Assembly: GCF_001194135.2 (NCBI RefSeq)
Contig: NC_068984.1
Location: 74,857,821-74,917,130 of the forward strand
Direction: 5' to 3'
From: Octopus bimaculoides
Taxonomy: Eukaryota
DNA: 59,310 nt
The translations under genes were made by a program, and so were the position numbers. Positions 16,733-49,537 of the stretch are shown piece after piece; the stretch's first letter is position 1; every line of letters starts with the position of its first letter. Below the pieces are notes generated by a model. That model made no database searches and had not been told where the DNA came from. It worked only from the letters and a program-made list of their open reading frames with translations.

Positions 16733-18702
16733 CATACATAAATACATACTAATCAGATGTTGATATTTCACAGAAATATCTAAAGATTAGATTTTTATCT
16801 TGTAATTATTTATAATGTGTATAACAATATAATTCTATAAAATATATCATAAATTGCTTTCTTTTTAATGATTTCAGATTTACAAACATTGGCATCGTTT
16901 GCTTCAAATGGTAATGGTGAGAGGATACATTATTTATATGAGATTTGGTTTTTGGCGTATAAGGTGTATGAAGTGATTGACTCTGTAGAAAGTATTAGGG
17001 TTACCGAGAAGTAATTTCATATTTTCAAGCTAACAGCAACTGAAAAAAATCGGTGTCAAAATTATCTGGTACTTAGAGTGGGAAAGAAAATTAACGTCAC
17101 AATATCTGGGATATTTAGAGTGGGAAAGTGTATAGATATGGGAATTGGAATACCTCATGATCTATCCCCCGAGAATGAAACAGTATGTTAAACAATTTGC
17201 TAACCAGGAATGAACAAACACCTTTTCTGATGAGAAATAGACAGTCCATGCCAATAATAAACGTAAGAAGCACTGACTATCGCCAAATGAAAATCCAGTT
17301 CCGACACTCAAACAAGATACTACTGTGTGTTTGGTAGAGTACGATAGGTGTTGTTCACTTCGAATAATTGGAACAAGGAAAAAACATTACCGTAGAAATT
17401 TATTGTCAACAATTTGAAAGTGTCGATCAGGATTTGTTCCAAAACAACCAGCTCTTGTCAACAGGGAAGGGATCATCGGGCAACATTCAGCAAAGATAGT
17501 TCAAGAAAAGGTAAATTCATTTGACTGAGAAACTCTTCCTCTTCTTCCCTACTCACCAGATGTAGTCCCATCAGATTTTACTTCTGATGAATAGAGCTTT
17601 GGATTTATTCACCAGAAGATACGCATATACGGCTATTGCCGTGGAATATTAATGCAATGCTGTGCATAACGTATGTAACATTCAGAAAGGAATAGCTGCT
17701 ATATTTCATTCAATTTGCCATCAAGTAGCTTCGGGCTGGACAATAACATTAATGAGATGAATAATGAAAAAATGGTATTAATGAGGGAAGGCAGAAGACG
17801 CCCGCCTATCTCTACCTCTTTAAAACATTGTTCTTTTACAAACATACAATTTGAGGTAATAGACCTCTTACTAATGTTCCATTTGGACACAAGATCCTTA
17901 CAATGAGGTACTAAGCCTCTTACCAAAAATAACATAATGTCCTTACAAATGAGACACTAGGCTTCTTACATTTTCTCTTATGGGCCATATGCCCGTTCAG
18001 TATGAGGCATTCAGCCTCTTAATTTTACTATTTTCCGCCCCGCCGGCACCCGACCAGGCTCAAAGCGTCATTCAAGCACTCCGATAGTGCCAGGTCAGCG
18101 GAAGCGGAATACATCTTCTGGGAAGGAGTCCATTACCTTAACAAGATCCGTGTCTGAGATGACCTGCGGAGGCCATCCAGGATCCTTAATGCAGGTTATG
18201 TCTCCACCCCTGGCAAACTTTTTAGTAAACTTTCCCACCACCTCTCCCCTTCGGGAGAAGACCAAATATTCTTCCTCCATTGGGCCGAGGCCACAATTTT
18301 TCACTGCCCCATTTTTCTTCTTTTTTCTGCTCTTTGCTACGGGAGGGTGTAGTTCCTCCGCTTTAACCGGGAGATCTTCCCTCCCTCCCGCATCCTTGGG
18401 GTCCTTCGGTGGGCAACCATTGTTGCCCACCTTTTTCCTTTTTTCCCCTTTTTTTCGGGGGTGTTTTCACTTCCTCCATCTCTCCCTCCGAAGGAGGAGG
18501 TGGGGATTCTTCCATCACTGACTGTTCCAGGACTATACTTTGGTCCTGTGGACAGTTCTTTTTAATGTAGCCTGGTTCCAGGCACAGGTGACACTTGGGG
18601 GGCGTCCCTCAAGAGTCACCGGATATCTAGAACCGGCCATTTTAAGAATATCTGGAAACACCAGATTCTTGGCTAATTGGGTCCACAGGGTCAAACTATC
18701 TA

Positions 18703-24073: not shown

Positions 24074-26680
24074 TGTCTGTATATGTTTGTGTGTCTGTGT
24101 CCCCCCCAACATCGCTTGACAACCGATGGTGGTGTATTTAGGTCCCCGTAACTTAGGGGTTCGGCAAAAGAGACCGATAGAATAAGTACTAGGCATCCAA
24201 ATAATAAGTCCTGGGGTCGATTTGCTCGACTAAAGGCGGTGTTCCAGCATGGCCGCAGTCAAATGACTGAAACAAGTAAAAGAGTAAAAGAGTATAGATA
24301 ATTTGAATCAATCACATTAAATTTCTGATGTAGTGCTTATTGAATGGGGACTAACAGACTAAGTAAACTCAGGAAAGTACTGTATTCACCATAAGACATT
24401 TAATCCAAGCTTTGGATGTTTCTACCACTTTACCTACTTAGTAGTATACAATATTGGAACGTATTAAGATACAAACGCTATATATCTTTAGTTACAGGAA
24501 ATGTGGTGTGTCATACTCATGCTTGAGTCTTTTAGTGACGTAATTCAAATGGATAATAGTTTCAAATGCGTTGTGTAGACTTACTTATTCATGTATTAAT
24601 GTAAGGCAACAACTAAAATATGGATTATCTTTTTCCTAAATTACGTTTTCCATATGTAAAATCTTTACCGTATATTTAATTCACAGCAAGACGAGGTGAC
24701 TTGTTATATATTGCAAATGCTCTATTTGTCTTACGCTTAAATTACCAAAATCTCACAACTATCAAAGAAATTTTCACTATATAGATGATCTATTTTAACT
24801 ATACAATCATGTAGAAACTTGTATTTTGCATTTCCTATTAATCTTCCACTGAAATTACCTAGATACTTTGACTATTTAAAACCATTTGGGTATTAAATAA
24901 CTACGATAATACTTAATAAGAAAATTAAGAAAATGTTTTTATACTTTTTCTTTCAAATGTTTTATACCATCACAGAAAGTGCTGAAATGTTTGCAAAGAA
25001 AGAGAACGGTAAGTTGATATACATTTCTCAAAAGACATAATTTTCTATCACAAAATAATATTTGGGGGGTCACTTCCGATCATTTGGTATTCATTTGCAA
25101 AGCGATACAATTGATGTGGGTGACCTTGCTGGTGGCCCTTAAAACTCATGTAGTCAGACTAGATATTTACTAAATGGCTGTTCAATACAAGATGGTTTTA
25201 CAACAAGATGTACATAATAACTATTATAACACAGTCCTTAATTTGAGTTATAGAATATACATTTACAAGTACTACCTGTTCCATGATTGAGTGGTCGGCA
25301 ACTAAACCGACTTCCCCACCTGAGTTGGTTGCTATTCTTGAGAAGGGTGTCTAGACACCCAGCAGTACTAAAAGTAAGACATGTCGAAGGACAAATGAGC
25401 TCCTTGTGGGCCAACGGCCATCGAGTTGAGGAAAGCCATGGAAAACCATCTCAATATCTTTGAAAAGAAAGCACTATAAGAAAGTCAAAGTTTTATGGCT
25501 TCATCCGATGGGAGAAGACGCGCTTAATCAGGAAAACTCTTACCTTAGCGTCATTAACGCGCTGCAAAAGCGTACGATACATGGCGACGACCATGATGAC
25601 ATTTACAACAATTATAAACAGAAGAGCCGAAATGCAAAAGCAAAATAATAAAGATGAGTTAGGACTTCGGTGTGTATCCTAAACATATGTACGTAAGTTG
25701 TACATCATAATTAAAAACATGTATATCAAATGTACAACAGATGGAATATGCATGCCAGCCTCAACCAGTAACAGTTACTGAATGTAGCTAGCATATCCCG
25801 TCTTTTATTCTCTAATGGTATTAGCCATCGGACAATCGTCATTCCTGAACACTGTCTTCAAAGGTTTCTGGGCAGTTACATTGATTCTTGTATGTTTTTC
25901 TGCTGCTTACTTAGAAAAGATATAGACTACAAAGTGAATGTTGCTTTGTGTGGTAGAAAAGTCAGATATATATACCGCAGAGTATGTGATCGAATATATG
26001 ATCGAATATATCAGTTTCCCACATGAAGATATATCATAACATTTACTCGTGATGATGGAGCCTCAGTTCGATGTGTAATTTAAATATAGCGCTGACCGTT
26101 TCTTATAGTCAATTAAAGATCCATATACTATGCATGTTATGTATAAATGAGTTGGGGGAAGAAAACGGAGACGTTTGAGTGTACTTGAAAAATTTTCGTA
26201 AACTATATCTGCTAAATTGCCTAGGCAAGAACAATGCTAAATTGATAAGCAAAAATCGGGTCTACGTCCACAGCAGTGCTTCAGTTTCCAATTTTCCTTA
26301 AACGTGTTAATTTACTTCAATTTATTCTTCATTTCTTGAAAATACTTCCACTTCTTATTCAGAGCATTTAAAAACTATCGTTGGGCTTCTGTTTATTCTC
26401 TTTTCTGTCAGTTATCCAAAATTTTAACAAATGTAAAATTATCATATGTACGTCTTTCAGTGCATCAATTTTAGCTTCTAATGCAAATTCATATCACTGG
26501 CTACTTTCAGCCGTTGCCTTTTAGCACGCACACACGCACACACGCACGCACACACACACACACACACACACATACACACACGAAACACAGACACACACAC
26601 ACACACACAAAACACACACATTAACTACAATATGTATATATATATTGTTTAAAATATATGTACATATTATACACATATCA

Positions 26681-27147: not shown

Positions 27148-28895
27148 ATGTATTGTTTTATGCATGAATATAAGTATATATGAATTTAATATAATCTTAA
27201 GTTTAACATTTTCAGGAAACATATTTATGCACATGAATGTATGGCTGAACGTAAATTTAGGTATGTACAATTTCGTGATTACTGCTTTCTTGTTTATTAA
27301 ACTATAACAATAGATGCAAATATGATGATTATGAATCATTTAAATACTAACATTCATATATAAACGACACTTGCCATTATGAACACTGATTTGACACAAG
27401 ATAGCGAAACGGAATCATTGACCAAGTCGGGAAAAAATATATGTCACTTTCCGGGTGAACGTGTTACTATTTATTTTGTGTACAGAAGGCTTGCCAATAT
27501 TTATTTAAAACGATTTTTCTGTTATTATATGGTGGTCTTGATATAATTTGGCTGAAATGGATGGTAATGGCTTTTTTATTGCTTTTGTTTCGTTTCGTTT
27601 TGTTTTTTCGGACTCATTCCGATAGTCATCGAGAGAGAAGAGATAAGATCGTCACCAACCATCTTCAAAAGATTACAAACAAAGTAGTATAGATTCCAGG
27701 AGTAAGTTGGTCCAGCAACCAACCAGAAATGACACGTATAATGGTTTCTGATAAGGTTAACTATTTTAAGAGGATGCGTTAGTTTATAGCACTGACTCCA
27801 GTACTTGACTGGTTCTTTATTTTATCAAACCTGAAAAGAAGTGATCTGGGCTGCATTTGAAGTTAGAATATAAAAAGTCGGAAGAAATATTGTAAAATTT
27901 TTTGTCCGACACTCTAATGATTCTGCCCATCTAGTGAAAAGTAAGCAAAAACATTTGCACCTTAATTTTCACCAAAATGACAAGAAAGTCAAAGAACCGT
28001 CAACAGTGAAAGAAGTGCTCAACTCTGGAGGAGATGCCATCACGACCTGAGCACAGCTTTAGTCGAAATGGCTAATGCAAATTAAAAAACTAAACCAAAA
28101 AATACATAAGGAACAAACATGTGTATGTATGTGTGTGCATGAATATTAACTGAAAAACGAACTCAAAAAGTGACAGTGATTTCAAAGTTTCGCTGGCCTT
28201 CTGTATGTAAAAGTTTCACTGGACTCACAAAAAAGGACAGTGATTTCAAAGTTTCACTGGCCTTCTGTATGTAAACATTCACCTTCTTTAGGGCAATGTA
28301 TCTGCTTACCAGAGAATTTAGTTACAAACGTTGAGATACCTTAAAACTTGGTCTGAAATAGCCGTGTTATATCCTTTTCCCTATGGCGTTTGGAAATGTT
28401 ATTACAAATCTTATAAAAGTATTTCGGTGTATAAATTCGTTTGTTTAAATTTAATTATTAGCTGTAATATTCATATTTCATTGCAAATATAAATGTCAAT
28501 GTTAGTTCAATTTTCAGTTTCATTTATAATTTCTATGACTGTCACAACTTTTCCTCTGCCAACATTTGAAAGTAATGTGTCATGTAAGTTATGAGAAACC
28601 AAGTTCATATCCTACGGATAATAGATTTTCGCTTTATGTCCTCGGGGTTGATTTGACATGTACCAGTTAAGTACTGTTGTAGACTTACTAAAATTTCTCC
28701 TTTATAAGTACAAATCAATTTTTCATATTTTAAGTCCTCATAATTTATCTTAAACACCAGAAATGACTCATGTTATTTATTTTAATTACAGATAAGAATA
28801 ATAAAGCATCTTCCAGTGGTGGTCATCCAACCAGTAAGTATATATATGTATGTGTGTGTGTATGTGTGTGTCTGTGTTTGTGTGTTTGTGTGTTT

Positions 28896-31045: not shown

Positions 31046-34000
31046 ATTTGCGCGCGCGCGACGGGTTATGCTCAATTTCCGTAGACGCAATCCACTCATG
31101 AGGCTTTGTTCGGCCCGAGTCCAATAGCAGAAGACTTTCCCAAGGTGCAACGCAGTTGGACTGAACTCGGAGCCATAAGATTGGGACGCAAAAGTGTTTC
31201 CATACAGCCACGCCAGCACCTGTGTATATGTTTCACATAATCTAACATTTTAACATATCGATAGAAAAAAAAGATCAGTAATTACATGAGAGTACGTACG
31301 CTTGAATGCTGAAAATGACCTTCCTCTGTCTATCTTGGCACAGACAAAGATCCAGTGCACACAATTAATCATCGTGCATTCCTTTGAAATTTAGTGATAT
31401 AGAGTCACCATCATTAACTTAGTGCATGATGACGTAGTAGTCTGTAATTAAACCTTTTACCTTCGTTCAATATGGATGAAAAGAATGAGAAGAAAATTCA
31501 TTAGCGTTGAAGATTGTTCAGAAAAGTAAAGGCTACAACTAGGAAATCTAAATTGAATAATAATTGAGCATATAACCAATTGTTGCAGATTCCCGATTCT
31601 CGCTTTTTTTTCTTTTTACAACCTAATTAACAAATAAGTTCTTAGTAATTCTTTAGTTTTAACTACTCTTTACTAACCTCGGTCCTTTGCTAACCCATTT
31701 TCTTTTCCTCCTCCACCCACTGCCTAAATTTATTGAATGTTCATCTGCGTTGTTGCATAATGCCTCTGTTGCCCTCCTTTCTCACTCATCTCCGTCCTCC
31801 CATGACCTAGCCTTCAACCCGTTCTTCTATTTCAACTTACCTAGAGAGTGTTACAAATGTTGATTATCCTTCCCTCACAGTTTACTTCCTCTCATATCGT
31901 ACTGCCCACCGACAACTCAAATCATCTGCTACACCAATCATACCTCTTCTCATATTACTTATTCAAACTCCCACTTTATTCACATCACCTCCCAAAATAC
32001 TTGCATCCTATCACATTAGCTTTCCCCATTCTCTATTCGCATCAACCTTTTCACTCCTTCACTTCGTTCATTTTGTTTGCTTATTTGAAGTTCTGCAACT
32101 TAGGCGATAATGCAGCTTCGTTCTTTCTCTCCAAAATCTTCAAGACTCCAAAACATTGGATCTTTTTACTCCCCATCATGACAAGTCAATTCATTGGAAC
32201 TCTTCTACAATTTTTTATTCAATATAAGTTGCCTTTCTTTTTATAAATAGCATATATCTTCCTCTTTTAGGTTCTTCCAGACAAAAGGGAAAGAGAAAAA
32301 GTAAGTTGATATATTTATATATGTATACAGAGAGATAGACAGATATGAATGCATGCATATATTAATGTGCATACACACATACATGAAATTTGATAGTATT
32401 TTAGAATGTCTAATGGAATTTAAAATTATTTTTAAGCATTTGTGTACATTTTTTCCATATANNNNNNNNNNNNNNNNNNNNNNNNNNNNNNNNNNNNNNN
32501 NNNNNNNNNNNNNNNNNNNNNNNNNNNNNNNNNNNNNNNNNNNNNNNNNNNNNNNNNNNNNNNNNNNNNNNNNNNNNNNNNNNNNNNNNNNNNNNNNNNN
32601 NNNNNNNNNNNNNNNNNNNNNNNNNNNNNNNNNNNNNNNNNTTATATATATATGTGTATATATATTTTTATATACATATATATACCGGGTGGTCAAAACT
32701 CACTTGACAGTAAATCAAAATTCCAAATATACTATCGGTAATTCTGTATTGACTCGAATGGGGAAATGTGTCGCTCAAGAAGGACTTCAGTTTGAACTAT
32801 TTTCATGATGTTTCATATTTAGACGCTTTTATTAAATTCATTCAGTTGTTAATCATAAATAAATTTTGGAATTAAATGGTTTTGATTTACTGTCAGGTAT
32901 ATATCAGTTCATGCCATAAGTTCTGTCCGAGTTTACCTTTTATAAAATTGAATGAAATTTAATAGTATTTTAGAATGTCTATTGGAATTAAAAAATATTT
33001 TTATGCATTTGTGTACATTTAAACTAATTGAATATTATTTTACAGAATAATAGAATTAAAATTCTTTTGATTAAAACCTTTTCTAACATGGAAGTATCCA
33101 AAGAGTATTTAAGGCACATACTGCTTTATGAGTACAAAAAAGGAAACTCTGCAGCCAAAGCAACTCTAAACATACACTTAGTTTATGTGAACGAATGTTT
33201 GAATGAAAACTTGCAGAAGATGGTTTGCAAAATTCAGAAGTAGAGATTTCAGCCTTGAAGATTAAAATCCAGTTGAGTTTGATGATAAGCTCCTTGAGGC
33301 ATTACTTGAAGAAAATCTTGCATTATCAGTTGAAGAATTGGCAATAAGGCTCAGTTCAAACCATACAACTGTTCATCGTCATCTTCAACAACTTGGAAAG
33401 GTTCCTAAACTTGGAAAATGAGTGCCTCATGAATTGTCCGAAAGCAACCGCAAATCTCTAGTTGACATCTGCTCTTCTCTCCATTCTCGCGAACACATTT
33501 CACCCTTTTTGGATAGACTTGTGACTGGTGGCGAAAAATGAATCTTCTATCGAAATGTAAAATGACGTAGACAGTGGCTTGGTAAAAGGGAAAAACTCAA
33601 CCACAACCGAAAAGGGAACTTCATGAGGAAAAGGTTCTTCTCTCTATCTGGTGGGATTGCAAAGGAGTAATTCATTTTGAACTGTTACCACCTAATGCAA
33701 CAATCAATGCTCAAGTCTATTGTCAGCAATTAGAGCGACTGAACCAAGCTTTGAAGGAAAAAAAACCCGCTTTAGTGAATCGAAAAGGAGTGATGTTTCA
33801 TCAAGACAATGCACGGCCGCACACTGCAAAGATCACATCACAGAAGATCGAAGAGTTCGGTTGGGAAAAATTTCCTCATCCACCTTATTCTCCCGACCTT
33901 GCTCCTTCAGACTACCATTTGTTTCGTAGTTTACAGAATCATTTGGGGGACATAACTTTCCCAGGAGGAGGTCGAAACTGACATTTCAGAGTTCTTCGCT

Positions 34001-36096: not shown

Positions 36097-39000
36097 TATG
36101 TGTGTGTATACATACATATAAGATATAGTATGTGTGTATGGGGTGAGAGAGAGAGTGATTGAACTGTGTTCGCAGATTGTCTTAAACTGTAAATATCTTG
36201 CCTTGTTATACAATATCTTTATGAACAATAAAGAAAGAAGGATCAGCCGGTCTTATTTCAGTTTTTCCATTGGTATCTCATCAGTGTCTGCGAAGTAAAT
36301 CGATTATTCTGATTCGGATATAATAATGCATTCTTCGCTGCTAATTCGATTAATAATTATTGACATGTTAACACTTTTTTAAATAATGCTTTAATGTACT
36401 TCTACAGAATAACACCAGAATTTTTTATGTGAGGTTTGTTTTGGGTCAACTCTTTGGGTGTAATAGAAATTAAATTGGTGTTCCAAACCGATTGAAACTA
36501 CTTAGGATGACTCCACTCCGATTGGACAATAGATATTTTATTTGATATATAAGTAATTCTTAAAGCAGCGAGCTTTTAGAATCGTTACTGCGCTGGACAA
36601 AATTTTAGCGGCATACCCTAAGCACTAAGTCACGCGCCTCCAACATGTATGCATTAGGTAGATGTAAAGATTACATAATGTAGATTTTTGCATCTTTCAA
36701 CGATATTTTGATCCTCTAAACCTGCGCCCTCGTTTCGTATAATTTTGTAATTCACGGCAAAAATAGTTATCAATCGATATATGTTGAGAGTATATGAACG
36801 TTCAGCTTTATATTTTCAAGGTAAGTGTGTAGTGAAGATATAATTAGGTTCGCTGGGAAGAATAAGCGACTGTAAATACCACAGGTTTACAATCAAGGAT
36901 ATATGAATGTTCAACGGCAATATTCTCATGTGGATTGTACGTTAGTAACATAATAGGATCAACAACTATTTTCTCGCCATGGAAATATATTATATCCGAA
37001 GCGATTATGTTATGTTGTGATTGTGTTATGCGATTGTGTTATGATGCTACGAAAGATAACTAAATAAGCACGTCCCCACTGGAAAGTATTTTCTAAGTCC
37101 TAAGAGTTCGTACTAAATATAGTTTATAATAAATAAAGTGTATAAAATATACAATAGTGTTTATGATCTATAGTTGGTAATTACTTTTATCAAAGTTATT
37201 AAAGGTTCATTTTATGTTTAACAATTGTTAGAGCGCCGGAAAATGCTTTGCAGATTTGTTCCAGTTCTTCACATTCTGAGTCAACTTCCTTCCAAATGAG
37301 TACCAGGACCGATTTAACCAACAACGCCATTCGCCCTCAAAATTTCAGACTCTGTCCCTGTGTAAACTATCATTATTTACCTAGAAATGGTAAAACTCAT
37401 GATTAGAGTTGCTTATCAGCATTAGCTCCCAAATATTATGCTGTATTCTTAATTTACGTCTCAACGCTTGTTCTTTCAATTTTCCACTAGCCTACAGAAA
37501 TAAATTTTCAGAAATTTATGAACATAATTACTTTACGCAAGCTGAAATCTAACAAATGTATAAATATAATCATTCTGATGAGTTTTACTTTGTAGTAGTT
37601 TTTAATCGAAACATATCTTCTGAAATAAAATAATTTTGCTTGCTATTTTTCAGTGTCCAAAACGGAGGAGTTCATTACTTCCAATGAAAATGGTATGCCA
37701 ATAAATCCATTTCTACAGTATTTATAATTGTATTCTGAGATGAAAAAGAATTTTCAGAAAATTTATCTTCTTCCCTGTAAAACCTAGATGCAACAATATT
37801 TTGTCTTATAAGTATTGATTAATAACATAGACAACAGTTTTTGGCTTTTAAGGCAATAATTCAGGCCGTCTTCTAATATAAACAAAACATACGTGTCTTT
37901 AGAAAGCAAAGATTTATGTTACCCAATACCTAAAGTACAAGTTCTCTAATTTTTCAGGAAGGGTACAGCTGACTATATGGGCCAGAGAATTTGGAAAGTA
38001 CTTATCTTATCCGGAAGTGATCATCCTGGTAGATTTTACTTTCATGTAGTCTTCATCAGTTCTTATTAAAACATTAAAAAATGCCTACTTTCTATTTTCA
38101 GAGCCCGAACGTGTGGGACAATCAACAACCAATGAAAATGGTGCGTTAATAATTCATTTATACTATATTTGTCATTGCATTCTGAGAGTAAAGAGAATTT
38201 GTAGAAAATATATCTTATAAAACCTAAATGCATCATTATCTTCTCTTATTGATATAGATTTGTAACTGACAAAAGATACTTGGATTTGTAAGGCAATAAT
38301 TCAAACCTATTTCTTACATAGGCAAAAACTTTGTCTTTGTAAAACAACCATTTGTACTGATTCATGGCAAAAAAACTCAGAATCTCAAACTTTCGAACAG
38401 GGTTATTGTCGATTACATCCCCTTGGCCAGTACTTTGATTTTAACGATTTCGAAATCATAAAAGGATTTGAATCAGAACTTAAAAGGCAATAATTAAATA
38501 TCAAAGCGCATTTTGGCTGACGATCTACCGATTTTGCGCAATTAAGGCTGGGGGATTACTGTGGATTTCTAACAATGACAAGATACTGATATATTTGTAA
38601 GGCAAGGATTAAAGTTGATTACAAATACAGACCTAACGTTGATGTCTTTGTAAGATAATAATAGATAATGTTATCTAACTCAAACACTAGCAACAGAGGC
38701 AAAGACCACCAGTGAATTGCTAATACTTGCTTCAGCTCACCCAGCGAAATTGGAACACAAAACCTACAGAGGTGAAGTTAAATACTGCAAACTCTCCTAT
38801 TAGGCAGATCTATCGGTTCCATCAACCAGAGCAGTCAGAGAAATACTAAATACTAGCAGAGTTACCCAGCGTTGCCTAGATGTCAAACATGTAGAAACAG
38901 TTTTGGTAAACTTGAACGGTTTAACTTCTGGACAATTTTACGTAGCGCTTTTTTGTGTTACCATGTTTGCATATATTTTTATTGTAATACAGATACATGT

Positions 39001-39900
39001 TTAAAGTTGAGCTTTTTATGATTTTTATGATGAAGAAACTTTTGAGACCGTCTATTGATAATTTTAATTTAGTGAGTTAGCATCTTTAAGTCTAACTTAT
39101 ATAGTTACACGACATAAAACAGAAGCAATTCTACGAGAAATGTCGGACGCTGACACTCGTTGATGCTGCATCGAAGAGGCCAGGGAATAGAAGAAAGAAG
39201 ACATGCACCCAACACCAGAGCTGAAGACACCTCCGAAAGGGGGGGGGGGGCGCCACGTCAAAACGGTAGAGGAGTAGGGGCCGAAACCGGACGTGGTTCC
39301 TCCTGATGATGTCTTGAGCTAACTGGATCCTATAAAGGAGCTGTTGTGGTAGCAGACCACGAAATATGGTTGAAATTCCTCAGCAAAGCCTACAAAAATA
39401 ATATGTCTTTATGCAGTTTGGTGCTCTGATGAAAAGATAACTGCTTTGAGGATCACATGAGCATGCAAGATAGTGTTGCACGTGAGAAAAATACGGACTC
39501 GTAAGTTCAACTCCAGAAACCTTGAGGAACTGCTTGTGAGACTCATTAATGGTCAAAAAAAATAAATCAGATATTGAAGCGCTATCGTTTTTTAAGTTCA
39601 TAATTCAAAACTTCATATCTTATAATGACAAAATTAAAATCATCAATAAAGATCCCCGAATGCATTATACATCATAGAAACCAGAAAATATTTAACCATA
39701 GACATGTGGATTCATTGAAAAATATGTGCAAATATAATCAAAAACAGATCCACTATATAAAACCTTTCTATAACTTAAGTCATTTAATTTTAATAAAAAA
39801 AACTTTTACACATTTAGCACCCAGGTATTGTCAGATACCCCAGTTAGTACATTTTAGATATGTAATTTTGAAAACGATAGTATATTTTTGGAACAACGCT

Positions 39901-39993
<93 letters not shown>

Positions 39994-41878
39994 AAACTTA
40001 GGGAATAATATGTATTCCAGGTTATCAGGACATTTATTATTTTACACTTTACTAATGCAATGTAAACAGTATCACTTATAATATTACAAATTTGGGCTTT
40101 TACCAATAGAACCACCACTCCTATTTCAGGACAACCTTATTGTCTGGAATACACATAGAAAGTTATATACTGATAAAATAATATAAGCATTTTAAAACCT
40201 ACTATGAAGTACAATATAATTATTTTAAAAGCTTATTTATGATATATTTGAAAAAATATATATACCTTACCTGTTATTAGTCTGTGGGGAAAAAAGATTT
40301 TTTAATCAACGCTACACGTGTTTCTGCGCTGGTGGTGTGTTTTTCCAGGCTATACCTATTACATAAATCCACCAGTGTGTCCTCAGGCTATTTATTTTAT
40401 TGTTATTATTATTAACGGGTCAAAGTTAAAACTACATATTCTAATACATAATAAATAGAAAAATAAGAATATGAATAAAAATATAATAAAAATATATAAC
40501 TTACAAATATATTTTTTTAAATTAAAAAATGAAATAATTAGAATATTTTTAAATTAACAAATTAGTAAAGATTAATAAAAATTAAACACTTAAAAATACA
40601 ATACCGATGTATCTAGAAAATGCTAAACATAAAGTAACCCTCAACGACTTTATTATAAGCACAACAAAATTCCACTACCTGTCTATATAAACATTACAGG
40701 AATTAATAATTTAGTGTAAGATTTACCTCTATCTATACAAGTATAAATTGCCATTTGTATGTCAAACGTAAGTTAATAGTAATTATAAATAAAAACCTCT
40801 ATATACGTTGTAAATTTATTGAATAAAACTACTAAATGAATCTAGTAAACCAAATTAACAAAGGAAAAATACTTATCGACATAATGTTTACTCCATCTCG
40901 TTCCTGTGCAAATGGTTGCTCCCTCTGTCGTGCGCTAAGTATTATGGGAATAATATCAATAAAATAAACTGCTCGGAAAAATTCTCTGAGACTAATAATA
41001 TTAGAGAGGTTAAATTCAAGGGGAGATTATAACAAGATACTCTACAATCTTGCTATAATTGGATTTTTTCTAGTGTTTAAGATATAGAGATTTATATTAT
41101 ATTAAATGTGGCCTGCCTATTCCTTTTAAGGTAATATTCTTTAAATATATTCTTGGTTCTTGGTATATCCATATCTAATACTATTATATAATTCTATTAT
41201 AACTACATTTAACTATCTTCCTCGTAATCGTTTAAGAGATTATATGCGAGGGGAGGTTATAATTTTATATATTTTTCATTTTATTATACGTAAATTTAAT
41301 CTTATGCCGGCATTTTAATTCCTCTATCTTCAATACTGTTCAGTAATACATCTCTCGACTGGAGTATTTTTATAAACTCAGTTGTGCATACTAAGCACAT
41401 TTTATTACCTATTCTATATGACTTCGCTCTACTAATGACATTCCAATTGAGGGTGTATTCTATTTTCTCAGATTTCAACTCCCATATGTATTTATTCAGA
41501 CTTATTTAATATGTATTAGAATATGTAGTTTTAACTTTGATCTGTTAATAATAATAACAATAAGATAAATAGCCTGAGGACACACTGGCGGATTTATGTA
41601 ATAGGTATAACCTGGAAGAGCACACCACCAGGGCAGAACAACGTGTAGCGTTGATTAAAAATATCTTCTTTCCCCACAGACTAATAACAGGTAAGGTATA
41701 TATATTTTTTCAAGTATATTATAAATAAGCTTTTAAAATAATTTTATTGTACTTTATAGTAGGTTCTAAAATGCTTATATTATTTTATTATTTTATAGGA
41801 TATAACTTTCTGTGTATTCCAGACAATAAGGTTGTCCTGAAATAGGAGTGGTGGTTCTATTGGTAAAATCCCAAATTT

Positions 41879-41910
<32 letters not shown>

Positions 41911-41914
41911 TATA

Positions 41915-41971
<57 letters not shown>

Positions 41972-43285
41972 TGTATAAAGAATCGTGGGTAAGGCAAAAA
42001 CAATGCGAAGTAAATGCAAGGTAAATCACTAGAAAACAAATATGTGAATAAATGCAGACTTACCTTGTATTCAATATTTCGAGGTTATGACCACGTTTTC
42101 AAGAAATTGACGATTGTTGCCTATGTGCGTGTGTGTGAGCGTGTGCGGAGTGGAATGCGCGGAGAGGTGTTGCTACAACAACCAGCCAGCTTCCTGTAAC
42201 TCTTTTGCTATTGTTGATCTTAGGTTTTTTTTTTGGGGGGGGGGGTATGAGGATGGCCTCAGAGATGTGCACTATGAACTCTCGGGTCTGGAATTTCCGT
42301 AGATGTTTCTTCACGGAAGTGCCTGCAATTCTTGTTTATATCTCGTTTCTCAAAGCAATCTCGTTTCTCAAAACCGCATTCGTGAGAAATGAGATTGCGC
42401 GTATAAACAACAATTGCAGCAACGTGAGCGACAAAGCCACCAACACCAAACTGTTCCTCAGAGACCTAACCCTGAATGGCTACCTGCCATCATTAGTTAA
42501 ACAACGGCGCCTAAAGAACATCAAGGTCAATAAAGCCCGGAAGAACCATCATACTCCTAAGTCCAGCACGGGCTTTCTAAAGCTACCGCTCTTTGACGAC
42601 AGAACTACTGCAGTGGTACAACACTCAGTCCGCAGGGAAGGACTCGACATACAGATAGTGCACACCAGCCCTTCCCTGAGAAAAGCTCTGTCCAAGAACA
42701 ACACCTCTCACTACTCCGAGGAGTTCACATTATCGAACTGCCCCATCAATAACCCTGAATTGTGCCAAGGGACCTATGTTGTGTAAGAGATCACCTGTGG
42801 AAAATGTGGCGCATCTTACATACGAAGCACGACAAGAAAACTGCATGTACATATNNNNNNNNNNNNNNNNNNNNNNNNNNNNNNNNNNNNNNNNNNNNNN
42901 NNNNNNNNNNNNNNNNNNNNNNNNNNNNNNNNNNNNNNNNNNNNNNNNNNNNNNNNNNNNNNNNNNNNNNNNNNNNNNNNNNNNNNNNNNNNNNNNNNNN
43001 NNNNNNNNNNNNNNNNNNNNNNNNNNNNNNNNNNNNNNNNNNNNNNNNNNNNNNNNNNNNNNNNNNNNNNNNNNNNNNNNNNNNNNNNNNNNNNNNNNNN
43101 NNNNNNNNNNNNNNNNNNNNNNNNNNNNNNNNNNNNNNNNNNNNNNNNNNNNNNNNNNNNNNNNNNNNNNNNNNNNNNNNNNNNNNNNNNNNNNNNNNNN
43201 NNNNNNNNNNNNNNNNNNNNNNNNNNNNNNNNNNNNNNNNNNNNNNNNNNNNNNNNNNNNNNNNNNNNNNNNNNNNNNNNNNNNN

Positions 43286-43323
<38 letters not shown>

Positions 43324-44623
43324 TATTATACATACATACATACTTGCATTCATGCATGCATTCATACATACATACATACATACATATATACATACATACA
43401 TACATGTACTTTCTCCTATACATATACGAAGGAGTGCTGAAAAATTTCTGACTTTGGGTAAAAGAAAATACAGGTGGATCAGTTAATTATGATTCTGTTC
43501 AACATACTCCCCTCACAGATTTCCGCGCTTATTGCAGCGGTCTTTCAGTTTTTTAAGCCCTGTAAAAAAGAAATCAGTACCCCCCCTCGTATGCGTATAA
43601 GTATGTAAAGGAGGAAGGGAGAGAGAGATTAAGACTGAAGAAACAAATCAGTTTGGCCTACAAACGGCAGTGATTCTGTACTTCACACTAATTCTCCTAC
43701 TAACCTACTTCTCAACTGCAATTCTTATTCTTTCTGCATCATTTTCTATCTCTGTAAAACCCCCAAGTTGTCTTCACCCGAATTATTCTGCTTCATGAAT
43801 TATTCTGAGAAACATGAGAATACTTCTGAGAAATTTCACAGAGGTTCGTTAAGATATAGTGATGATATTTCAAGACAAACTTTAAGAAATCTTGTCACTG
43901 CGATATCATCTATTATAGGTTGTCTTTGTTTTCATAATTTACCATGTTATTTCTTTTATACCTAGGCACTGATACCAATCACACTACACATGCAAACGGT
44001 ACTGCGCATGCAAACAGTACCACACATACAAAAGGTACTTCACCTATGAAAGGTACTTCACCTATGAAAGATACTTCACCTATGAAAAGTACTTCACCTA
44101 TGAAAGGTACTTCACCTATGAAAAGTACTTCACCTATGAAAGGTACTTCACCTATGAAAGATACTTCACCTATGAAAAGTACTTCACCTATGAAAGGTAC
44201 TACACATGCAAAAGGTTCTGCACCTACAAAAGACAGTGCCGATACAAAAGGTAAGATCNNNNNNNNNNNNNNNNNNNNNNNNNNNNNNNNNNNNNNNNNN
44301 NNNNNNNNNNNNNNNNNNNNNNNNNNNNNNNNNNNNNNNNNNNNNNNNNNNNNNNNNNNNNNNNNNNNNNNNNNNNNNNNNNNNNNNNNNNNNNNNNNNN
44401 NNNNNNNNNNNNNNNNNNNNNNNNNNNNNNNNNNNNNNNNNNNNNNNNNNNNNNNNNNNNNNNNNNNNNNNNNNNNNNNNNNNNGCATAGAGGAATATAC
44501 TATTTAAAAGAGTTCCAACTCTGTTTTTTATGTTTTATTTATATTCTTATAAGATTAATGTGGGATATAGAATATGGAATATATAATATAAATGGTAAAA
44601 TGAAATGAAGTATTGAATGTCTT

Positions 44624-44661
<38 letters not shown>

Positions 44662-44881
44662 TATATATATATAGTTCAAATTTACAGAACATAAAAGACG
44701 AAGACAGGTGAAGGAATAACAAGCAGGTGCATTAACTTGACGCTCGTGATGAATGGAAATGTCTTTGACGTTTCGAGCTTATGCTCTTCAACAGAAAGGG
44801 ATGAGAAGTAAAAAAGTGGAGAACGAAAACTTGGGGAGAGAAAAAATTGTGTAGGGATTAACATATGTATGAGTGTGTGTA

Positions 44882-44912
<31 letters not shown>

Positions 44913-45091
44913 ACATACATACGTTTGTGCAACTGATTCCTTTCAGTTTCCGCGAAGGAAATCCACTCACAAGGCGTCGGACATCCTGAGACTATAATAA
45001 AAGATACTTTCCCAAGGTGTCACGTAGCGGAGATGAACCTGGACTCATGCAGCTGGGTAGCATAACGTCTCACCACACAACTACGCCTGCG

Positions 45092-45139
<48 letters not shown>

Positions 45140-45937
45140 TGTGTGATTCTAACAATTAAAATTGACACATTGAAAAACTGTATTTAATCACGTGACATTC
45201 GTATTTCAAAGTCATATATGCTTGTTTTCTCTCTCGTCATTGCTGTCTTGTATTTGTCGTTGAATTGTCGCCGTGATTTAGAGATTTCTTGACTTTTTGT
45301 TCACTGGACAAGTGTGTGAGTGGGTGTGTGTATGTGTTTGTGCGTGCGCGTGCGCGTGTGCTTGTGTACGTGTGTGTATGAGTGTGGTACAGAGTTAATG
45401 TATTAGTAAAGAAACTCTGCTTTCGCTAATTCATTAGCTCTTTTGAAAGTAAATTTATATTTTGCAGATATTTACGGATATTTAGGATATTTCTTTATGT
45501 TGCTATCGTTCGAGATAAATTTGATTCATACAGCCACTATAATATATTAATTTCTGACATAAACACAACACAACACAATTTGGAGCGAGAAATTATCAAT
45601 GTTGTTGACGCTAATTAATTAAGAGTTCAGTCGTAATCTTGTCATCCCTAGAAGAAAGAAATGCTAAAAATATTGACTCCGATGTGGCTGAAAATCAGAG
45701 CTTAAAAGGTGTCTAAACATCAGATAATATTTGCGCTGCACCGCGCTTAAAAGACTCCTTCGATTTTATTATTATAGTTTTTGTTTTCAAACGTCACGTG
45801 TGTTATTTCGTATAATTTCAGATCCTTCCAAACCATCAGATCCTTCCAAACCATCAGATGCCATTCCTATACCAGCGAGTAAGATGACATATATTTATTT
45901 ATTTATTTATATTCATTATACGGAACATTTGTGTGTG

Positions 45938-45992
<55 letters not shown>

Positions 45993-47648
45993 ATGTATGT
46001 ATGTATGTATATACGAGAAGGTACCCAAAATAACCGGAAACGTTCTCTGTAGGACAAGCCCATTGTAATTCAGGATTCCGCCACCAATTGCGCACTGGAG
46101 TCGATGTAATCGACTAGTCCCCTCTCACTAAATTTCAGGCCTTAGGTCTACAGTGGAAGGGTTATGTGAGTAGATCGGCAGATTAGAGTATTTGGCAAAA
46201 TAACTTTCTATATTTAGTTACAACTTTTAAGACAGCGAGCTGCCAGAATCGTTAGCATGCCGGGCGAAATGCTTAGCAGTAATTTTTCTGCTGCAACGTT
46301 CTGAGTTGAAATTCCGCCGAGGTCGACTTTGCCTTACATCCTTTCTAGGTCGATAAATTAAGTACCAGTTGAGTACTGGCGTCAATGTGATCGACTGTCC
46401 CCCTCCCCACAAATTTCAGGGCTTGTAGAAAGGATTGTTATTCTTATCATTATTACTATTATTATTATGGCGGCGAGCTGGCAGAATTGTTAACACACTG
46501 GATGAAATGCTTAGCGGTATTTCGCCCGTTGCTACGTTCTGAGTTCAAATTCCACGGAAGTCGACTTTGCCTTTCATCCTTTCGGTATCGATAAATTAAG
46601 TACTAGTTGCGCACTGGTGTCGATCTAATCAACTGGCCCCCTCCTCCAAAATTTCAGGCCTTGTGCCTATAATAGAAAGGCTCATTATTATTATTATGGA
46701 TCTTTTTTAAAACGGGGGCCACATTTTTCATTAACGAAACACTTTGAAACTTGGAACACTGGTAGAATGTGTCATATAAAACATCTTTTTCTCTTAGTCT
46801 TCTTTAAAAAAAAAGAAATCCCTAAGTTATTCCATGTTAAAGTTGTCNNNNNNNNNNNNNNNNNNNNNNNNNNNNNNNNNNNNNNNNNNNNNNNNNNNNN
46901 NNNNNNNNNNNNNNNNNNNNNNNNNNNNNNNNNNNNNNNNNNNNNNNNNNNNNNNNNNNNNNNNNNNNNNNNNNNNNNNNNNNNNNNNNNNNNNNNNNNN
47001 NNNNNNNNNNNNNNNNNNNNNNNNNNNNNNNNNNNNNNNNNNNNNNNNNNNNNNNNNNNNNNNNNNNNNNNNNNNNNNNNNNNNNNNNNNNNNNNNNNNN
47101 NNNNNNNNNNNNNNNNNNNNNNNNNNNNNNNNNNNNNNNNNNNNNNNNNNNNNNNNNNNNNNNNNNNNNNNNNNNNNNNNNNNNNNNNNNNNNNNNNNNN
47201 NNNNNNNNNNNNNNNNNNNNNNNNNNNNNNNNNNNNNNNNNNNNNNNNNNNNNNNNNNNNNNNNNNNNNNNNNNNNNNNNNNNNNNNNNNNNNNNNNNNN
47301 NNNNNNNNNNNNNNNNNNNNNNNNNNNNNNNNNNNNNNNNNNNNNNNNNNNNNNNNNNNNNNNNNNNNNNNNNNNNNNNNNNNNNNNNNNNNNNNNNNNN
47401 NNNNNNNNNNNNNNNNNNNNNNNNNNNNNNNNNNNNNNNNNNNNNNNNNNNNNNNNNNNNNNNNNNNNNNNNNNNNNNNNNNNNNNNNNNNNNNNNNNNN
47501 NNNNNNNNNNNNNNNNNNNNNNNNNNNNNNNNNNNNNNNNNNNNNNNNNNNNNNNNNNNNNNNNNNNNNNNNNNNNNNNNNNNNNNNNNNNNNNNNNNNN
47601 NNNNNNNNNNNNNNNNNNNNNNNNNNNNNNNNNNNNNNNNNNNNNNNN

Positions 47649-47679
<31 letters not shown>

Positions 47680-47996
47680 GCAATGTTAATTCTCTAAACG
47701 AGGTATTAACAGTAACTGCACGATAAAGTGAAGTATATTGCCACTTAAATGTAGCTGACCCCTAGGGATGGATGTCACTGTTGCTTTTAGCCCCAGGAGG
47801 ACATCTCCTCCAGCTGGCTTATCGACACACTTCTGTGTCCTGTTTGTTTTGCCAAGGGAAGTTATCCCTCTCATCGTCATCTGTAGCACGAACGGACTCG
47901 AGTTTCAGGGTTATTTCCCATCGTCAGCGTCCGATAGCCACCGATCTGCGATGAGAAAGATAATTCTTGGCAAACTTATGTATCTTTTTCCATGTA

Positions 47997-48029
<33 letters not shown>

Positions 48030-48806
48030 TGCTTGTAGAGTTTATTATATAGTATAATGTTTTTTCCTTTCTCTTTGTAGGCGCTTATTCATTCGGAAGA
48101 TTTGCTTCTGGTGGAAATGGTACGTCGTTAACTCATATATACAATATTCATGTCGTTAATTTGTGAGAGAGATCTAGAAAATATATTTCCCTTCCAAAAT
48201 CCATAATGCATATTATTCCGAAATCTGCCTGCGACAGGAATATATATACATACATTTGCGGGATCTTTTTTAAAACAGGGGCCACATTTTTCATTAACGA
48301 AACACTTTGAAACTTGGAACACTGGTAGAATGTGTCATATAAAACATCTTTTTCTCTTAGTCTTCTTAAAAAAAAAACAGAAATCCCCAAGTTATTCCAT
48401 GTTAAAGTTGTCGTATTTCTGTAATTTCAACCAATCACTGACGTCCATTCAGCCCATATACATTAAGTGCCGACTACATAAACAAACGATTCTGAAACAA
48501 TTCTATCGGTGATAGCAAATTTAAAAAGAAAAAAGAAAAACGAAGCTATCGAAATTAAATACGCTTTACACCGCTTAATCAGCCAAAGGAGTAAATGTAA
48601 ACAACTGAATACTTGTCAGTGATTGGTTGAAATTATCGAAATAAGACAATTTTTTACATGAAATAAATTCGAATACAAAAATATTTTTCTGTTCTATAAC
48701 ACAAAATAGATAAGTATACGAAGTTTGAAAGTCTTTCGGTACCAAAAACACTACGTAAAACATTAATGAAAAATGTGGCCCCCGTTTTAAAAAAGATCCC
48801 ATTTGC

Positions 48807-48847
<41 letters not shown>

Positions 48848-49449
48848 AATGATAGAAAATGGAATGAATGATATTCATTATTGAAAAACTGTTTCGATAA
48901 ATTTTTACACATGTAGTACAGCACTAAGATGCTGTGTAATCATTATTACGCGTCCAAGGTGTAAAATATGCGATCATTAGATCTAACCGTCATCGACTCA
49001 GTGTGAGGATGCATACACCAAAGGATGTATCATTTTAACTTATTTCAGCGCATTTCGCTGTTTTGTAAAAATAATTTATGTTTGAAACTTTATTGATACT
49101 ATCTGCTTATTTTACTTTAATCTTTATCATATTGGGTGTATTTATTTCTGGTTCTTAAAAGAAGTTACATGTATGTAAGAAGCATATGTGTGTGTGTATA
49201 CCAAACTATATGCATTACCTGATATGTGGGTTCGACCTAAGCTAACAATTATGTCAGAAGTGTATATGTACCCATATATATAAATAAATACGTGAACATA
49301 TTCTATCTCCCCTCGTAGCTCATAACTAATAATAACTCAATATAGAAATTATTTAACTATGCAGGAAGCAGGTTGGATTTGGATAATATACGTTGAACAT
49401 AACGGTAGCAGTCGTACATCTAAACGCAAGCACAATTTCTACTATATAA

Positions 49450-49537
<88 letters not shown>

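What the first reader, a model, noticed from the sequence alone, without database searches (positions are those of the whole stretch)
37654..48190. A 39-nt '..N-G' exon family (E11, E12, E15, probably E4) with a fixed 3' end and variable 5' two-thirds
Seen: E11 and E12 share AAT GAA AAT G but match at only 10 of the first 26 nt (22/39 overall), while about 78 nt of downstream intron are about 77% identical by hand alignment. E15, 10 kb away, keeps the same downstream intron motifs (tcat.tatac.atatt..tgagag..tagaaaatatat). E4 ends FASNGN|G and E15 ends FASGGN|G. Inference: dispersed as well as tandem exon duplication, yielding interchangeable 13-aa cassettes that are candidates for mutually exclusive use.
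Basis: partly seen in the sequence, partly recalled or inferred. Interest (0 to 1): 0.7.

Follow-up and report, generated by a model that had tools for sequence, protein, structure and literature searches.

The report
Duplicated tiny exons in octopus gene
Three (perhaps four) 39-base exons of an uncharacterised octopus-only gene are old copies of one another whose coding parts have changed faster than the surrounding introns; this is ordinary exon duplication in a fast-evolving repetitive gene, and nothing indicates that the copies are used one at a time.

Summary
E11 (37654-37692) and E12 (38102-38140) match at 22/39 nt, 10 of the first 26, and share a 14-nt block across the donor. Their flanks align over about 350 nt (68.7%, E=4e-40). 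E15 (48081-48119) shares its 3' end plus about 105 nt of downstream intron with E12; no shuffle or real control window reached that score. E4 (16878-16916) resembles E15 only within the exon; its flanks are at background.

The window is octopus DNA. The gene is built from small phase-1/phase-1 exons. Its only relative is an Octopus vulgaris hypothetical protein with no Pfam domain. The gapless O. vulgaris locus is collinear across all three assembly gaps, which are intronic.

Both species carry E11 and E12, so the tandem duplication predates their split. The O. vulgaris mRNA model joins the E4 and E15 orthologues in one transcript and omits E11/E12.

No exclusivity mechanism was found: lengths are divisible by three, the intron is 409 nt, all sites are GT-AG, and no docking complement exists.

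Exons differ between species at 13-26%, against 8.5% for introns.

Verdict: duplicated, probably additive cassette exons. Mutually exclusive use is unsupported and needs RNA data.

The parts
16878..16916 (+). E4, a 39-nt phase-1/1 exon (LQTLASFASNGN|G). Possible distant member of the family.
   Evidence: Splice sites and ORF. Its orthologue is exon 4 of the O. vulgaris model, but only 30 nt long. It resembles E15 only inside the exon. Flanks are at background. nhmmer E=6e-4.
24976..25008 (+). 33-nt phase-1/1 exon (SAEMFAKKEN|G). It is the orthologue of the O. vulgaris exon 'NAEVISKKEN|G' and shares the ..EN|G ending. Possible further relative, not demonstrated.
   Evidence: tblastn hit. Orthologue alignment. 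Coordinates fixed. Flanks are not similar to E11, E12 or E15.
37569..37915 (+). E11 duplication unit: upstream intron, exon E11 (37654-37692, SKTEEFITSNEN|G) and downstream intron.
   Evidence: Aligns to 38020-38353 at 68.7% over 351 columns, E=4e-40. The orthologue at L001 65909-65947 has an intact ORF and AG/GT sites. It is absent from the O. vulgaris gene model.
38020..38353 (+). E12 duplication unit: upstream intron, exon E12 (38102-38140, PERVGQSTTNEN|G) and downstream intron.
   Evidence: The orthologue at L001 66356-66394 is intact; it differs at 7 positions in 5 codons, and all 5 codons change the amino acid. It is absent from the O. vulgaris gene model.
38555..38678 (+). Third, exon-less partial copy of the distal intron segment of the unit. 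It contains the motif TAAGGCAATAATTCA.
   Evidence: BLAST against E12 38248-38347 gives 68% over 106, E=5e-7. The motif clusters at 37849, 38289, 38483 and 38598.
43966..44250 (+). E13, a 285-nt exon rich in His, Asn and Thr, with an 18-nt (GTSPMK) repeat array. It is the exon to which E12 (or the 33-nt exon) would be spliced, creating an N-G-T sequon.
   Evidence: Orthologue of O. vulgaris exon 7. TRF finds 9.7 copies of an 18-nt unit. Translation.
48081..48223 (+). E15 exon (48081-48119, AYSFGRFASGGN|G) plus the downstream intron element shared with E12 and E11.
   Evidence: BLAST 48112-48216 against 38133-38239 gives 71% over 114, E=1e-8. z=11.5, with 0 of 2000 shuffles and 0 of 7299 real windows reaching the score. 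The orthologue is exon 8 of the O. vulgaris model, 39 nt.
42855..43285 (.). Assembly gap 1, in the TE-rich intron between E12 and E13.
   Evidence: The flanks map collinearly to L001 at about 69844 and 70395.
44259..44484 (.). Assembly gap 2. It starts 8 nt after the E13 donor, in an intron.
   Evidence: L001 is continuous here (71691 to 71700). The window carries about 400 extra bases, counting the gap.
46848..47648 (.). Assembly gap 3, inside a window-specific insertion upstream of E15.
   Evidence: Window 46698-47994 has no counterpart between L001 75441 and 75451. The gap is entered from a copy of a TIR element.

Best explanation
The gene. These are exons of an octopus-lineage gene on the + strand. 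It is built almost entirely of very small phase-1/phase-1 exons. The encoded protein is low-complexity, rich in His, Asn, Gly and Thr and in sequons, and is presumably secreted and glycosylated.

How the family arose. The gene has grown by exon duplication.
- A segment of about 450 bp carrying one 39-nt exon was duplicated in tandem, giving E11 and E12. This happened before the split between the window species and O. vulgaris.
- A shorter segment (the exon plus about 105 nt of downstream intron) of the same ancestry sits at E15.
- E4 may be an older relative.

What happened afterwards (shown).
- The exon bodies diverged to near-random similarity.
- The donor-proximal 10-14 nt and the adjacent intron stayed recognisable.
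- The same asymmetry appears between species: exons change 2-3 times faster than introns, mostly at amino-acid-changing positions.

Inferred steps.
- The peptide-coding bodies are under diversifying selection, or are otherwise unusually fast-evolving.
- The purine-rich exon end and the proximal intron are retained because they carry splice-definition signals for such short exons.
- The copies behave as independent, additive cassette exons. E4 and E15 are included together. E11 and E12 are optional. They are not a mutually exclusive set.
For: Duplication.
- E11/E12 units align with E=4e-40.
- E12-E15 flank score is 36 against 12.0 +/- 2.1 in shuffles, and 0 of 7299 real windows reach it.
- An nhmmer profile recovers exactly E11, E12 and E15 in both species (E 1e-39 to 2e-49), then E4 weakly, and nothing else in 165 kb.

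Age. Both copies are present and intact at L001 65909 and 66356.

Gene context.
- Phase-1/1 exon series.
- Single homologue, P0001.
- No Pfam domain.

Co-inclusion of the E4 and E15 orthologues in one model.

Fast exons.
- Exons 64/318 (20.1%) against 150-nt flanks 156/2045 (7.6%), Fisher p=1.3e-10.
- Whole-window intron baseline 8.55% over 35,093 nt; exons 13-26%.
- Nei-Gojobori pN 0.214 and pS 0.111 over 89 codons; pN against intron p=2e-8.
- E11+E12 alone: 13/78 against 36/592, p=0.002.

Mild constraint on the proximal intron: 16/330 (4.8%) against 188/2308 (8.1%), p=0.036.

No exclusivity mechanism found.
Against: No transcript evidence was available for the window species.

The O. vulgaris model is a 'hypothetical predicted protein' from a pipeline that mixes Iso-Seq, RNA-seq, protein alignments and ab initio calls (PMC10700109). 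Its exon composition is therefore not proof of splicing. E11 and E12 are absent from it.

Per-exon acceleration is individually weak. The empirical probability for a 39-nt non-exon window is 0.12 for >=6 mismatches, 0.058 for >=7 and 0.028 for >=8.

pN against pS is not significant on its own (p=0.10).

The constraint on the downstream element is marginal (p=0.036).

The secreted or glycosylated status is inferred only from composition and N-x-S/T motifs. No signal peptide was seen, and the model's start lies in a repeated exon.
Confidence: 0.6

Rival explanations
1. E11 and E12 (only this adjacent pair) form a two-exon mutually exclusive cluster born by tandem duplication. One of the two 13-residue cassettes is chosen per transcript, and each gives the same ..EN|G-T junction with E13.
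For: They are adjacent, of equal length, in the same phase and homologous, with homologous flanking introns. These are the features used to nominate MXE candidates (PMC5740500; PMC6071210). Their donors (gtatgc, gtgcgt) are weaker than the gtaagt of most neighbouring exons. The O. vulgaris model has a single ..ENG exon before E13.
Against: Both lengths are divisible by three, and joint inclusion reads through. The intron is 409 nt, so there is no steric block. All sites are GT-AG. No reverse complement of any block shared by E11 and E12 exists in the neighbouring introns of either species, and no complementarity rises above background. That test has low power for short or G-U-containing pairings. 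Many similar neighbouring exons are not exclusive. There are no RNA data.
Confidence: 0.12
2. E11 and E12 are not used at all. They are decaying relics of duplicated exons lying in an intron, and only E4, the 33-nt exon and E15 are real.
For: They are absent from the only mRNA model. No protein or transcript-derived sequence containing them was found in 5.8 billion proteins. A 12-codon open frame in AT-rich DNA is not rare by chance.
Against: In both species the acceptor, polypyrimidine tract, donor, length and frame are intact, with no stop or indel despite 13 substitutions. Their divergence (15% and 18%) exceeds the local intron rate (4-7%), as in the exons that are in the model; neutral relics should match the intron rate. 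Several other good candidate exons (14231, 20411, 28792, 30730, 32271, 45822) are also missing from the model and also show elevated divergence, which suggests the model is incomplete.
Confidence: 0.2
3. The flank similarity is not exon duplication. It is either chance in AT-rich sequence or a dispersed repeat element that happens to lie next to the exons.
For: The sequence is AT-rich (31-34% GC) and full of transposon copies. The distal motif TAAGGCAATAATTCA recurs locally.
Against: None of 2000 dinucleotide shuffles and none of 7299 real windows reach the E12-E15 score. The similarity starts inside the exon and keeps the donor in register in all six sequences. The profile finds no exon-free copy in 165 kb on either strand.
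Confidence: 0.03

Closest known systems
Tandem exon duplication, and the clusters of mutually exclusive exons derived from it (Dscam exon clusters, human ATE1 7a/7b; PMC5740500, PMC6071210, PMC9013439)
   Same: The exons are adjacent, equal in length and phase, and homologous. Their flanking introns are homologous too, and the duplicated segment includes adjacent intron sequence.
   Different: The exon bodies are far less similar than the introns (38% against 69-77%), the reverse of typical MXE pairs, where coding constraint keeps the exons similar. No frame incompatibility, steric limit, U2/U12 mismatch or docking/selector complementarity was found. One family member is 10 kb away. Two members (E4, E15) are co-included in the only mRNA model.
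Accelerated evolution of exons with conserved introns, as first described for snake-venom PLA2 genes and later for other toxin genes (Nakashima et al. 1993, 1995, as reviewed in PMC7285919)
   Same: Coding parts differ more than introns between related sequences. Non-synonymous change is at or above synonymous change.
   Different: Here the protein is a low-complexity repeat protein of unknown function, not a folded toxin. The comparison rests on two species and 89 codons. No tissue or function is known.
Repetitive structural or matrix genes built of short symmetric cassette exons (elastin, titin PEVK, mucin-like genes). This comparison is from my own knowledge and was not tested here.
   Same: There are many short exons with one constant splice phase, so any exon can be gained, lost or skipped without a frameshift. 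Growth is by exon duplication. The product is low-complexity.
   Different: There is no sequence relationship. The exons here are smaller (27-42 nt for most), and they evolve unusually fast.

Membership tests
Tandem exon duplication | Neighbouring exons of the same gene are homologous, with homology extending into the flanking introns | tested here: met
   E11 and E12 units: 351 aligned columns, 68.7%, E=4e-40. Flank score 54 against a maximum of 24 in 7299 real windows.
Tandem exon duplication | Same length class and same splice phase, so that the copy is translatable | tested here: met
   Both are 39 nt, phase 1/1, open and GT-AG in both species.
Dispersed (non-adjacent) exon duplication | Significant homology of a distant exon and its flank to the tandem pair | tested here: met
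   E15 against E12: z=11.5, with 0 of 2000 shuffles and 0 of 7299 real windows reaching the score. nhmmer E=1e-39. For E4 the result is inconclusive: E=6e-4, exon only.
Mutually exclusive exon cluster | Candidate criteria: neighbouring exons, similar length, same reading frame, sequence similarity (Hatje et al. 2017) | tested here: met
   Met for E11/E12. Not met for E4 or E15, which lie 21 kb and 10 kb away with other exons in between.
Mutually exclusive exon cluster | Transcripts contain exactly one member of the cluster | not testable with these tools
   No RNA reads were available. The one mRNA model (P0001) contains the E4 and E15 orthologues together and neither E11 nor E12.
Mutually exclusive exon cluster | A mechanism enforcing exclusivity: frame incompatibility with NMD, steric hindrance (donor to branch point under about 50 nt), or U2/U12 incompatibility | tested here: not met
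   39+39 nt keeps the frame, and the joint translation has no stop. The intron is 409 nt, and all sites are GT-AG.
Mutually exclusive exon cluster | Competing RNA pairings: selector sequences next to each variant, complementary to one docking site | tested here: not met
   The best reverse-complement scores of the three downstream elements over 20-50 kb are 20-23, equal to the background maximum of 21-24. No exact complement of any shared block of >=8 nt exists in the neighbouring introns of either species. Power is low for short or G-U pairings.
Frame-neutral cassette exon | Symmetric phase and a length divisible by three | tested here: met
   This is true of nearly all exons of the gene.
Frame-neutral cassette exon | Observed skipping or inclusion in transcripts | not testable with these tools
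   The only hint is that E11 and E12 are intact in O. vulgaris DNA but absent from its gene model.
Genes with accelerated coding evolution (exon divergence above intron divergence) | Non-synonymous divergence exceeds the neutral proxy (introns, synonymous sites) | tested here: met
   pN 0.214 against intron 0.0855, p=2e-8. pN is above pS (0.111), but that difference is not significant (p=0.10), over 89 codons. Two species only.

The most novel reading that the evidence does not exclude
The donor-proximal exon end plus about 110 nt of downstream intron could be a conserved, portable 'exon-definition module'. It would have been copied at least three times and kept recognisable for several times the age of the O. 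bimaculoides/O. vulgaris-type split. Meanwhile the 8-9 codons in front of it are driven to diversify. On this reading the gene would be a cassette-hypervariability system in an octopus-specific secreted glycoprotein. The choice or number of optional cassettes (E11, E12 and other unannotated micro-exons) would vary between tissues or individuals.
Probability: 0.15. Interest if true: 0.6.

Novelty: new member of a known kind. Interest (0 to 1): 0.35.

Why it matters
This is a clean, checkable example of how a lineage-restricted animal gene grows by copying micro-exons.

It also shows an unusual evolutionary asymmetry: coding bodies change 2-3 times faster than the introns around them. Elsewhere that pattern marks genes in arms races or under strong diversifying pressure, such as toxin genes (PMC7285919).

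For cephalopod genomics the result flags three things.
- The gene is an orphan that is probably under-annotated.
- The O. vulgaris model seems to miss several exons.
- The locus is one where long-read RNA data could reveal extensive cassette-exon variation.

It does not reveal a new kind of splicing control.

Tried and rejected
Searches and tests that gave nothing.
- Homology search with a concatenated exon translation found only P0001.
- An exhaustive HMMER search with P0001 found only a spurious repeat match, P0002 (E=4e-4, to the 'NPE' repeats).
- Pfam gave nothing for P0001 or for the 193-aa ORF at 42205-42786.
- ORFs of 70 aa or more on both strands of 36-49.5 kb are only repeats, gaps, that ORF or E13. 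There is no overlapping gene.
- TRF did not report the 448-bp period, because identity is below its threshold.
It was replaced by reverse-complement local alignment and by an exact search for complements of shared blocks. Both were negative.
- Flank similarity of the 33-nt exon at 24976 to the family is at background, although its peptide (..ENG) looks related.

Ideas considered and rejected.
- A transposon origin of the shared intron element, because there are no exon-free copies.
- The 71-nt AG..GT stretch at 37958-38028 between E11 and E12 as an exon. It is not divisible by three, and its 9/71 divergence is not clearly above background.

A correction. In one search the 33-nt exon was entered 2 nt off. 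This was corrected, and the conclusion is unchanged.
Full report
WHAT THE WINDOW IS

The sequence is AT-rich eukaryotic DNA with 13 assembly gaps, microsatellites and transposon copies.
- E11: 37654-37692
- E12: 38102-38140
- E15: 48081-48119
- E4: 16878-16916

A crude scan for AG..GT intervals open in phase 1/1 shows a whole series of such small exons on the + strand:
- 9499-9621, 14231-14296, 16878-16916, 20411-20458, 21697-21723
- 28792-28833, 30730-30771, 32271-32300
- E11, E12, then E13 (43966-44250), 45822-45878, E15
- 57532-57573 and 58600-58641

HOMOLOGUES AND THE REFERENCE LOCUS

A search with their concatenated translation found one homologue among 5.8 billion proteins. This is P0001, a 307-aa 'hypothetical predicted protein' of Octopus vulgaris with no Pfam domain. 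An exhaustive HMMER search with P0001 found no further real relative.

The genomic locus of P0001 was fetched as L001. It comes from OX597817.1, is 105.7 kb long and contains no N.

The window aligns to L001 collinearly, with 8.55% substitutions over 35,093 nt. That level fits a congener such as O. bimaculoides. According to PMC10700109, O. bimaculoides split from O. vulgaris about 34 My ago and its assembly is very gap-rich. The species assignment is my inference.

THE ASSEMBLY GAPS

Window 36334-49496 maps in order and orientation to L001 64566-76486.
- Gap 1 (42855-43285) lies in a transposon-rich intron. It corresponds to about 550 nt of L001.
- Gap 2 (44259-44484) starts 8 nt after the E13 donor. 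L001 is continuous there, so the window has about 400 extra bases or an assembly artefact.
- Gap 3 (46848-47648) lies inside a window-specific insertion, 46698-47994. The insertion begins with a copy of a 541-bp element with 38-nt terminal inverted repeats. A complete copy of that element sits at 48260-48800.

No gap touches an exon. The gapless O. vulgaris intervals hold no additional family member. Because every exon is phase 1/1, the frame does not depend on the gaps.

CHECKING THE OBSERVATION

E11 and E12 match at 22/39 nt, 10/26 in the 5' part and 12/13 in the 3' part. The first 78 intron bases match at 59/78.

One alignment covers 37569-37915 against 38020-38353 at 68.7%, E=4e-40.

For E15, the 120 nt downstream score 36 against those of E12.
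- Dinucleotide shuffles give 12.0 +/- 2.1 (z=11.5), with 0 of 2000 reaching 36.
- None of 7299 real windows from this same AT-rich sequence exceeds 24.

An nhmmer profile built from the three units of both species recovers only these six sequences strongly. E4 follows as the best extra hit, at E=6e-4 in the window and E=0.15 for the O. vulgaris orthologue. E4's flanks are indistinguishable from background. Its membership rests on 'FASNGN|G' against 'FASGGN|G' alone.

WHAT THE ORTHOLOGOUS LOCUS ADDS

All exons of the O. vulgaris model are phase 1. One mRNA contains the following orthologues:
- E4, at 43008-43037, only 30 nt long
- the 33-nt exon at window 24976-25008 ('..KKEN|G')
- E13
- E15, at 75539-75577, 39 nt long

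E4 and E15 are therefore co-included in that model, not alternatives.

E11 and E12 orthologues exist in O. vulgaris DNA at 65909-65947 and 66356-66394, 447 bp apart. Their acceptors, donors, length and frame are intact, but they are not in the model. The tandem duplication therefore predates the species split.

From 31% divergence between paralogues against 8% between orthologues, the duplication is very roughly four to five times older than the split. This is an inference that assumes a clock.

The '3' end' is not invariant across species. O. vulgaris E11 ends ..ER|G, and E4 ends ..GK|G.

THE UNEXPECTED PATTERN: EXONS CHANGE FASTER THAN INTRONS

Between the two species the exons are more different than the introns around them.
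- For seven orthologous exon pairs, exons differ at 64/318 positions (20.1%) and their 150-nt flanks at 156/2045 (7.6%), p=1.3e-10.
- With the whole-window alignment, candidate exons range from 10% to 26%, and all except E4 (10%) and E13 (9%) lie at 13% or more, against 8.55% overall. Candidates not in the O. vulgaris model are included: 14231 at 24%, 20411 at 23%, 30730 at 17%, E11 at 15% and E12 at 18%.
- Nei-Gojobori counts over 89 codons give pN 0.214 and pS 0.111. pN exceeds the intron rate with p=2e-8. pN against pS is not significant (p=0.10).
- For E11+E12 alone, 13/78 against 36/592 in flanks gives p=0.002.
- Single 39-nt non-exon windows reach >=6 mismatches with frequency 0.12 and >=7 with frequency 0.058. 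Each exon is therefore weak evidence on its own, and the pair is suggestive.
- In E12 the 7 substitutions fall in 5 codons, all 5 change the amino acid, and there is no stop or indel.
- The 110 nt downstream of E11, E12 and E15 are slightly more conserved than background intron: 4.8% against 8.1%, p=0.036.

The exon body is at chance similarity, and the donor-proximal end and intron remain recognisable.

INTERPRETATION

Shown:
- tandem and dispersed duplication of a micro-exon with its adjacent intron
- conservation of both tandem copies in two species
- fast, mostly amino-acid-changing divergence of exon bodies

Inferred:
- There is diversifying selection on the peptide, or at least an absence of purifying selection combined with something that raises the rate.
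- The purine-rich exon end and proximal intron are retained as splice-definition signals.
- The exons are used additively as cassettes.

The protein is low-complexity. It has several N-x-S/T motifs and, in this species, an 18-nt repeat array encoding (G/S/D)TSPMK in E13. The E12|E13 junction reads N-G-T. I infer a secreted, glycosylated product, but no signal peptide was identified. The annotated O. vulgaris start codon lies in an exon that is itself repeated three times, about 5.2 kb apart, so the model is probably incomplete at its 5' end.

MUTUALLY EXCLUSIVE SPLICING

E11/E12 meet the nomination criteria used in the literature: neighbouring exons of similar length, in the same frame, with sequence similarity (PMC5740500). 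The same paper stresses that many similar neighbouring exons are not exclusive.

None of the known enforcing mechanisms is visible.
- Lengths are divisible by three, and the joint translation is open.
- The intervening intron is 409 nt, and all sites are GT-AG.
- No complementarity rises above background between the shared downstream elements and the surrounding 30 kb.
- No complement of any shared block of >=8 nt exists in the neighbouring introns of either species.
- The docking/selector model of PMC6071210 is therefore not supported. Short or G-U-containing pairings would escape my test.

The question can only be settled with RNA reads.

RIVALS

- E11 and E12 might be unused relics. Their absence from the model supports this. 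Their intact structure in two species and their above-neutral divergence argue against it.
- Chance or a transposon as the source of the flank similarity is excluded by the controls and by the register with the donor site.

COMPARISON WITH KNOWN THINGS

The mechanism of origin is classical tandem exon duplication. The evolutionary pattern resembles the 'accelerated evolution' of toxin genes, in which introns are more conserved than coding exons (PMC7285919). The architecture resembles repetitive matrix genes with symmetric cassette exons; that comparison comes from my own knowledge and was not tested here.

It is a new member of known kinds, in an unannotated orphan gene. It is not a new kind of system.

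Noticed in passing
window 9499-9621, 14231-14296, 20411-20458, 21697-21723, 28792-28833, 30730-30771, 57532-57573, 58600-58641 (and the family exons): Across the whole gene, exons differ from O. vulgaris at 13-26%, while their flanks differ at 4-10% and the window overall at 8.55%. Exons evolve 2-3 times faster than introns.
   Followed up: yes
window 14231-14296, 20411-20458, 28792-28833, 30730-30771, 32271-32300, 45822-45878: These are well-formed phase-1/1 candidate exons with strong splice sites and elevated divergence. They are not part of the O. vulgaris gene model, so that model (16 exons) is probably incomplete or represents a heavily skipped isoform.
   Followed up: partly
window 44031-44205 (inside E13): An 18-nt repeat (AAAGGTACTTCACCTATG, encoding G/S/D-TSPMK) is present in 9.7 copies. 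O. vulgaris has a single 'HTGPMK' at this place, so this is a species-specific in-frame expansion.
   Followed up: partly
window 48260-48800 and 46698-46847 (running into gap 3): A 541-bp element with 38-nt terminal inverted repeats (GGGATCTTTTTTAAAAC.GGGGCCACATTTTTCATTAA) lies 141 nt downstream of E15. A 98-99% identical left end lies upstream, at the edge of the gap. Both are absent from the O. vulgaris locus, which indicates recent MITE-like insertions or an assembly duplication.
   Followed up: partly
window 40070-40457 and 41503-41896: This is a long inverted repeat with arms of about 390 nt, 83-93% complementary and about 1 kb apart, in the E12-E13 intron. It is also present in O. vulgaris.
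   Followed up: no
window 42355-42820, next to gap 1: This stretch aligns to L001 69747-69281 on the opposite strand, and its first 140 nt also align to L001 69702-69844 on the same strand. The cause is a local inversion or an inverted duplicate partly hidden by the gap. It contains a 193-aa ORF with no Pfam match.
   Followed up: partly
window 57532-57573 and 58600-58641; L001 84491-91416: 42-nt exons encoding '..DTAFNPEA..' are repeated. There are two copies about 1.07 kb apart at the end of the window and four in O. vulgaris. This is a second exon family made by tandem duplication in the same gene.
   Followed up: partly
L001 4734-4808, 9968-10042, 15217-15291: The 66-nt exon 'ESSENPHRNMHMFNNRDDGSSE' of O. 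vulgaris occurs three times at a spacing of about 5.2 kb. The annotated start codon lies inside one copy, and no signal peptide is present. The 5' end of the model is doubtful.
   Followed up: no
window 37849, 38289, 38483, 38598; L001 66103, 66543 and 93646-93805: The 15-nt motif TAAGGCAATAATTCA sits about 195 nt downstream of E11 and of E12. It recurs twice more just downstream without an exon, and again as a small cluster upstream of a later O. vulgaris exon. Its function is unknown.
   Followed up: partly
window 38138-38140 / 43966-43970 (E12|E13 junction): Splicing any of the '..EN|G' exons (24976, E11, E12) to E13 produces the motif N-G-T, an N-glycosylation sequon. E13 itself carries NHT, NGT and NST. 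This may be a reason for the conserved Asn-Gly ending, but that is speculative.
   Followed up: no
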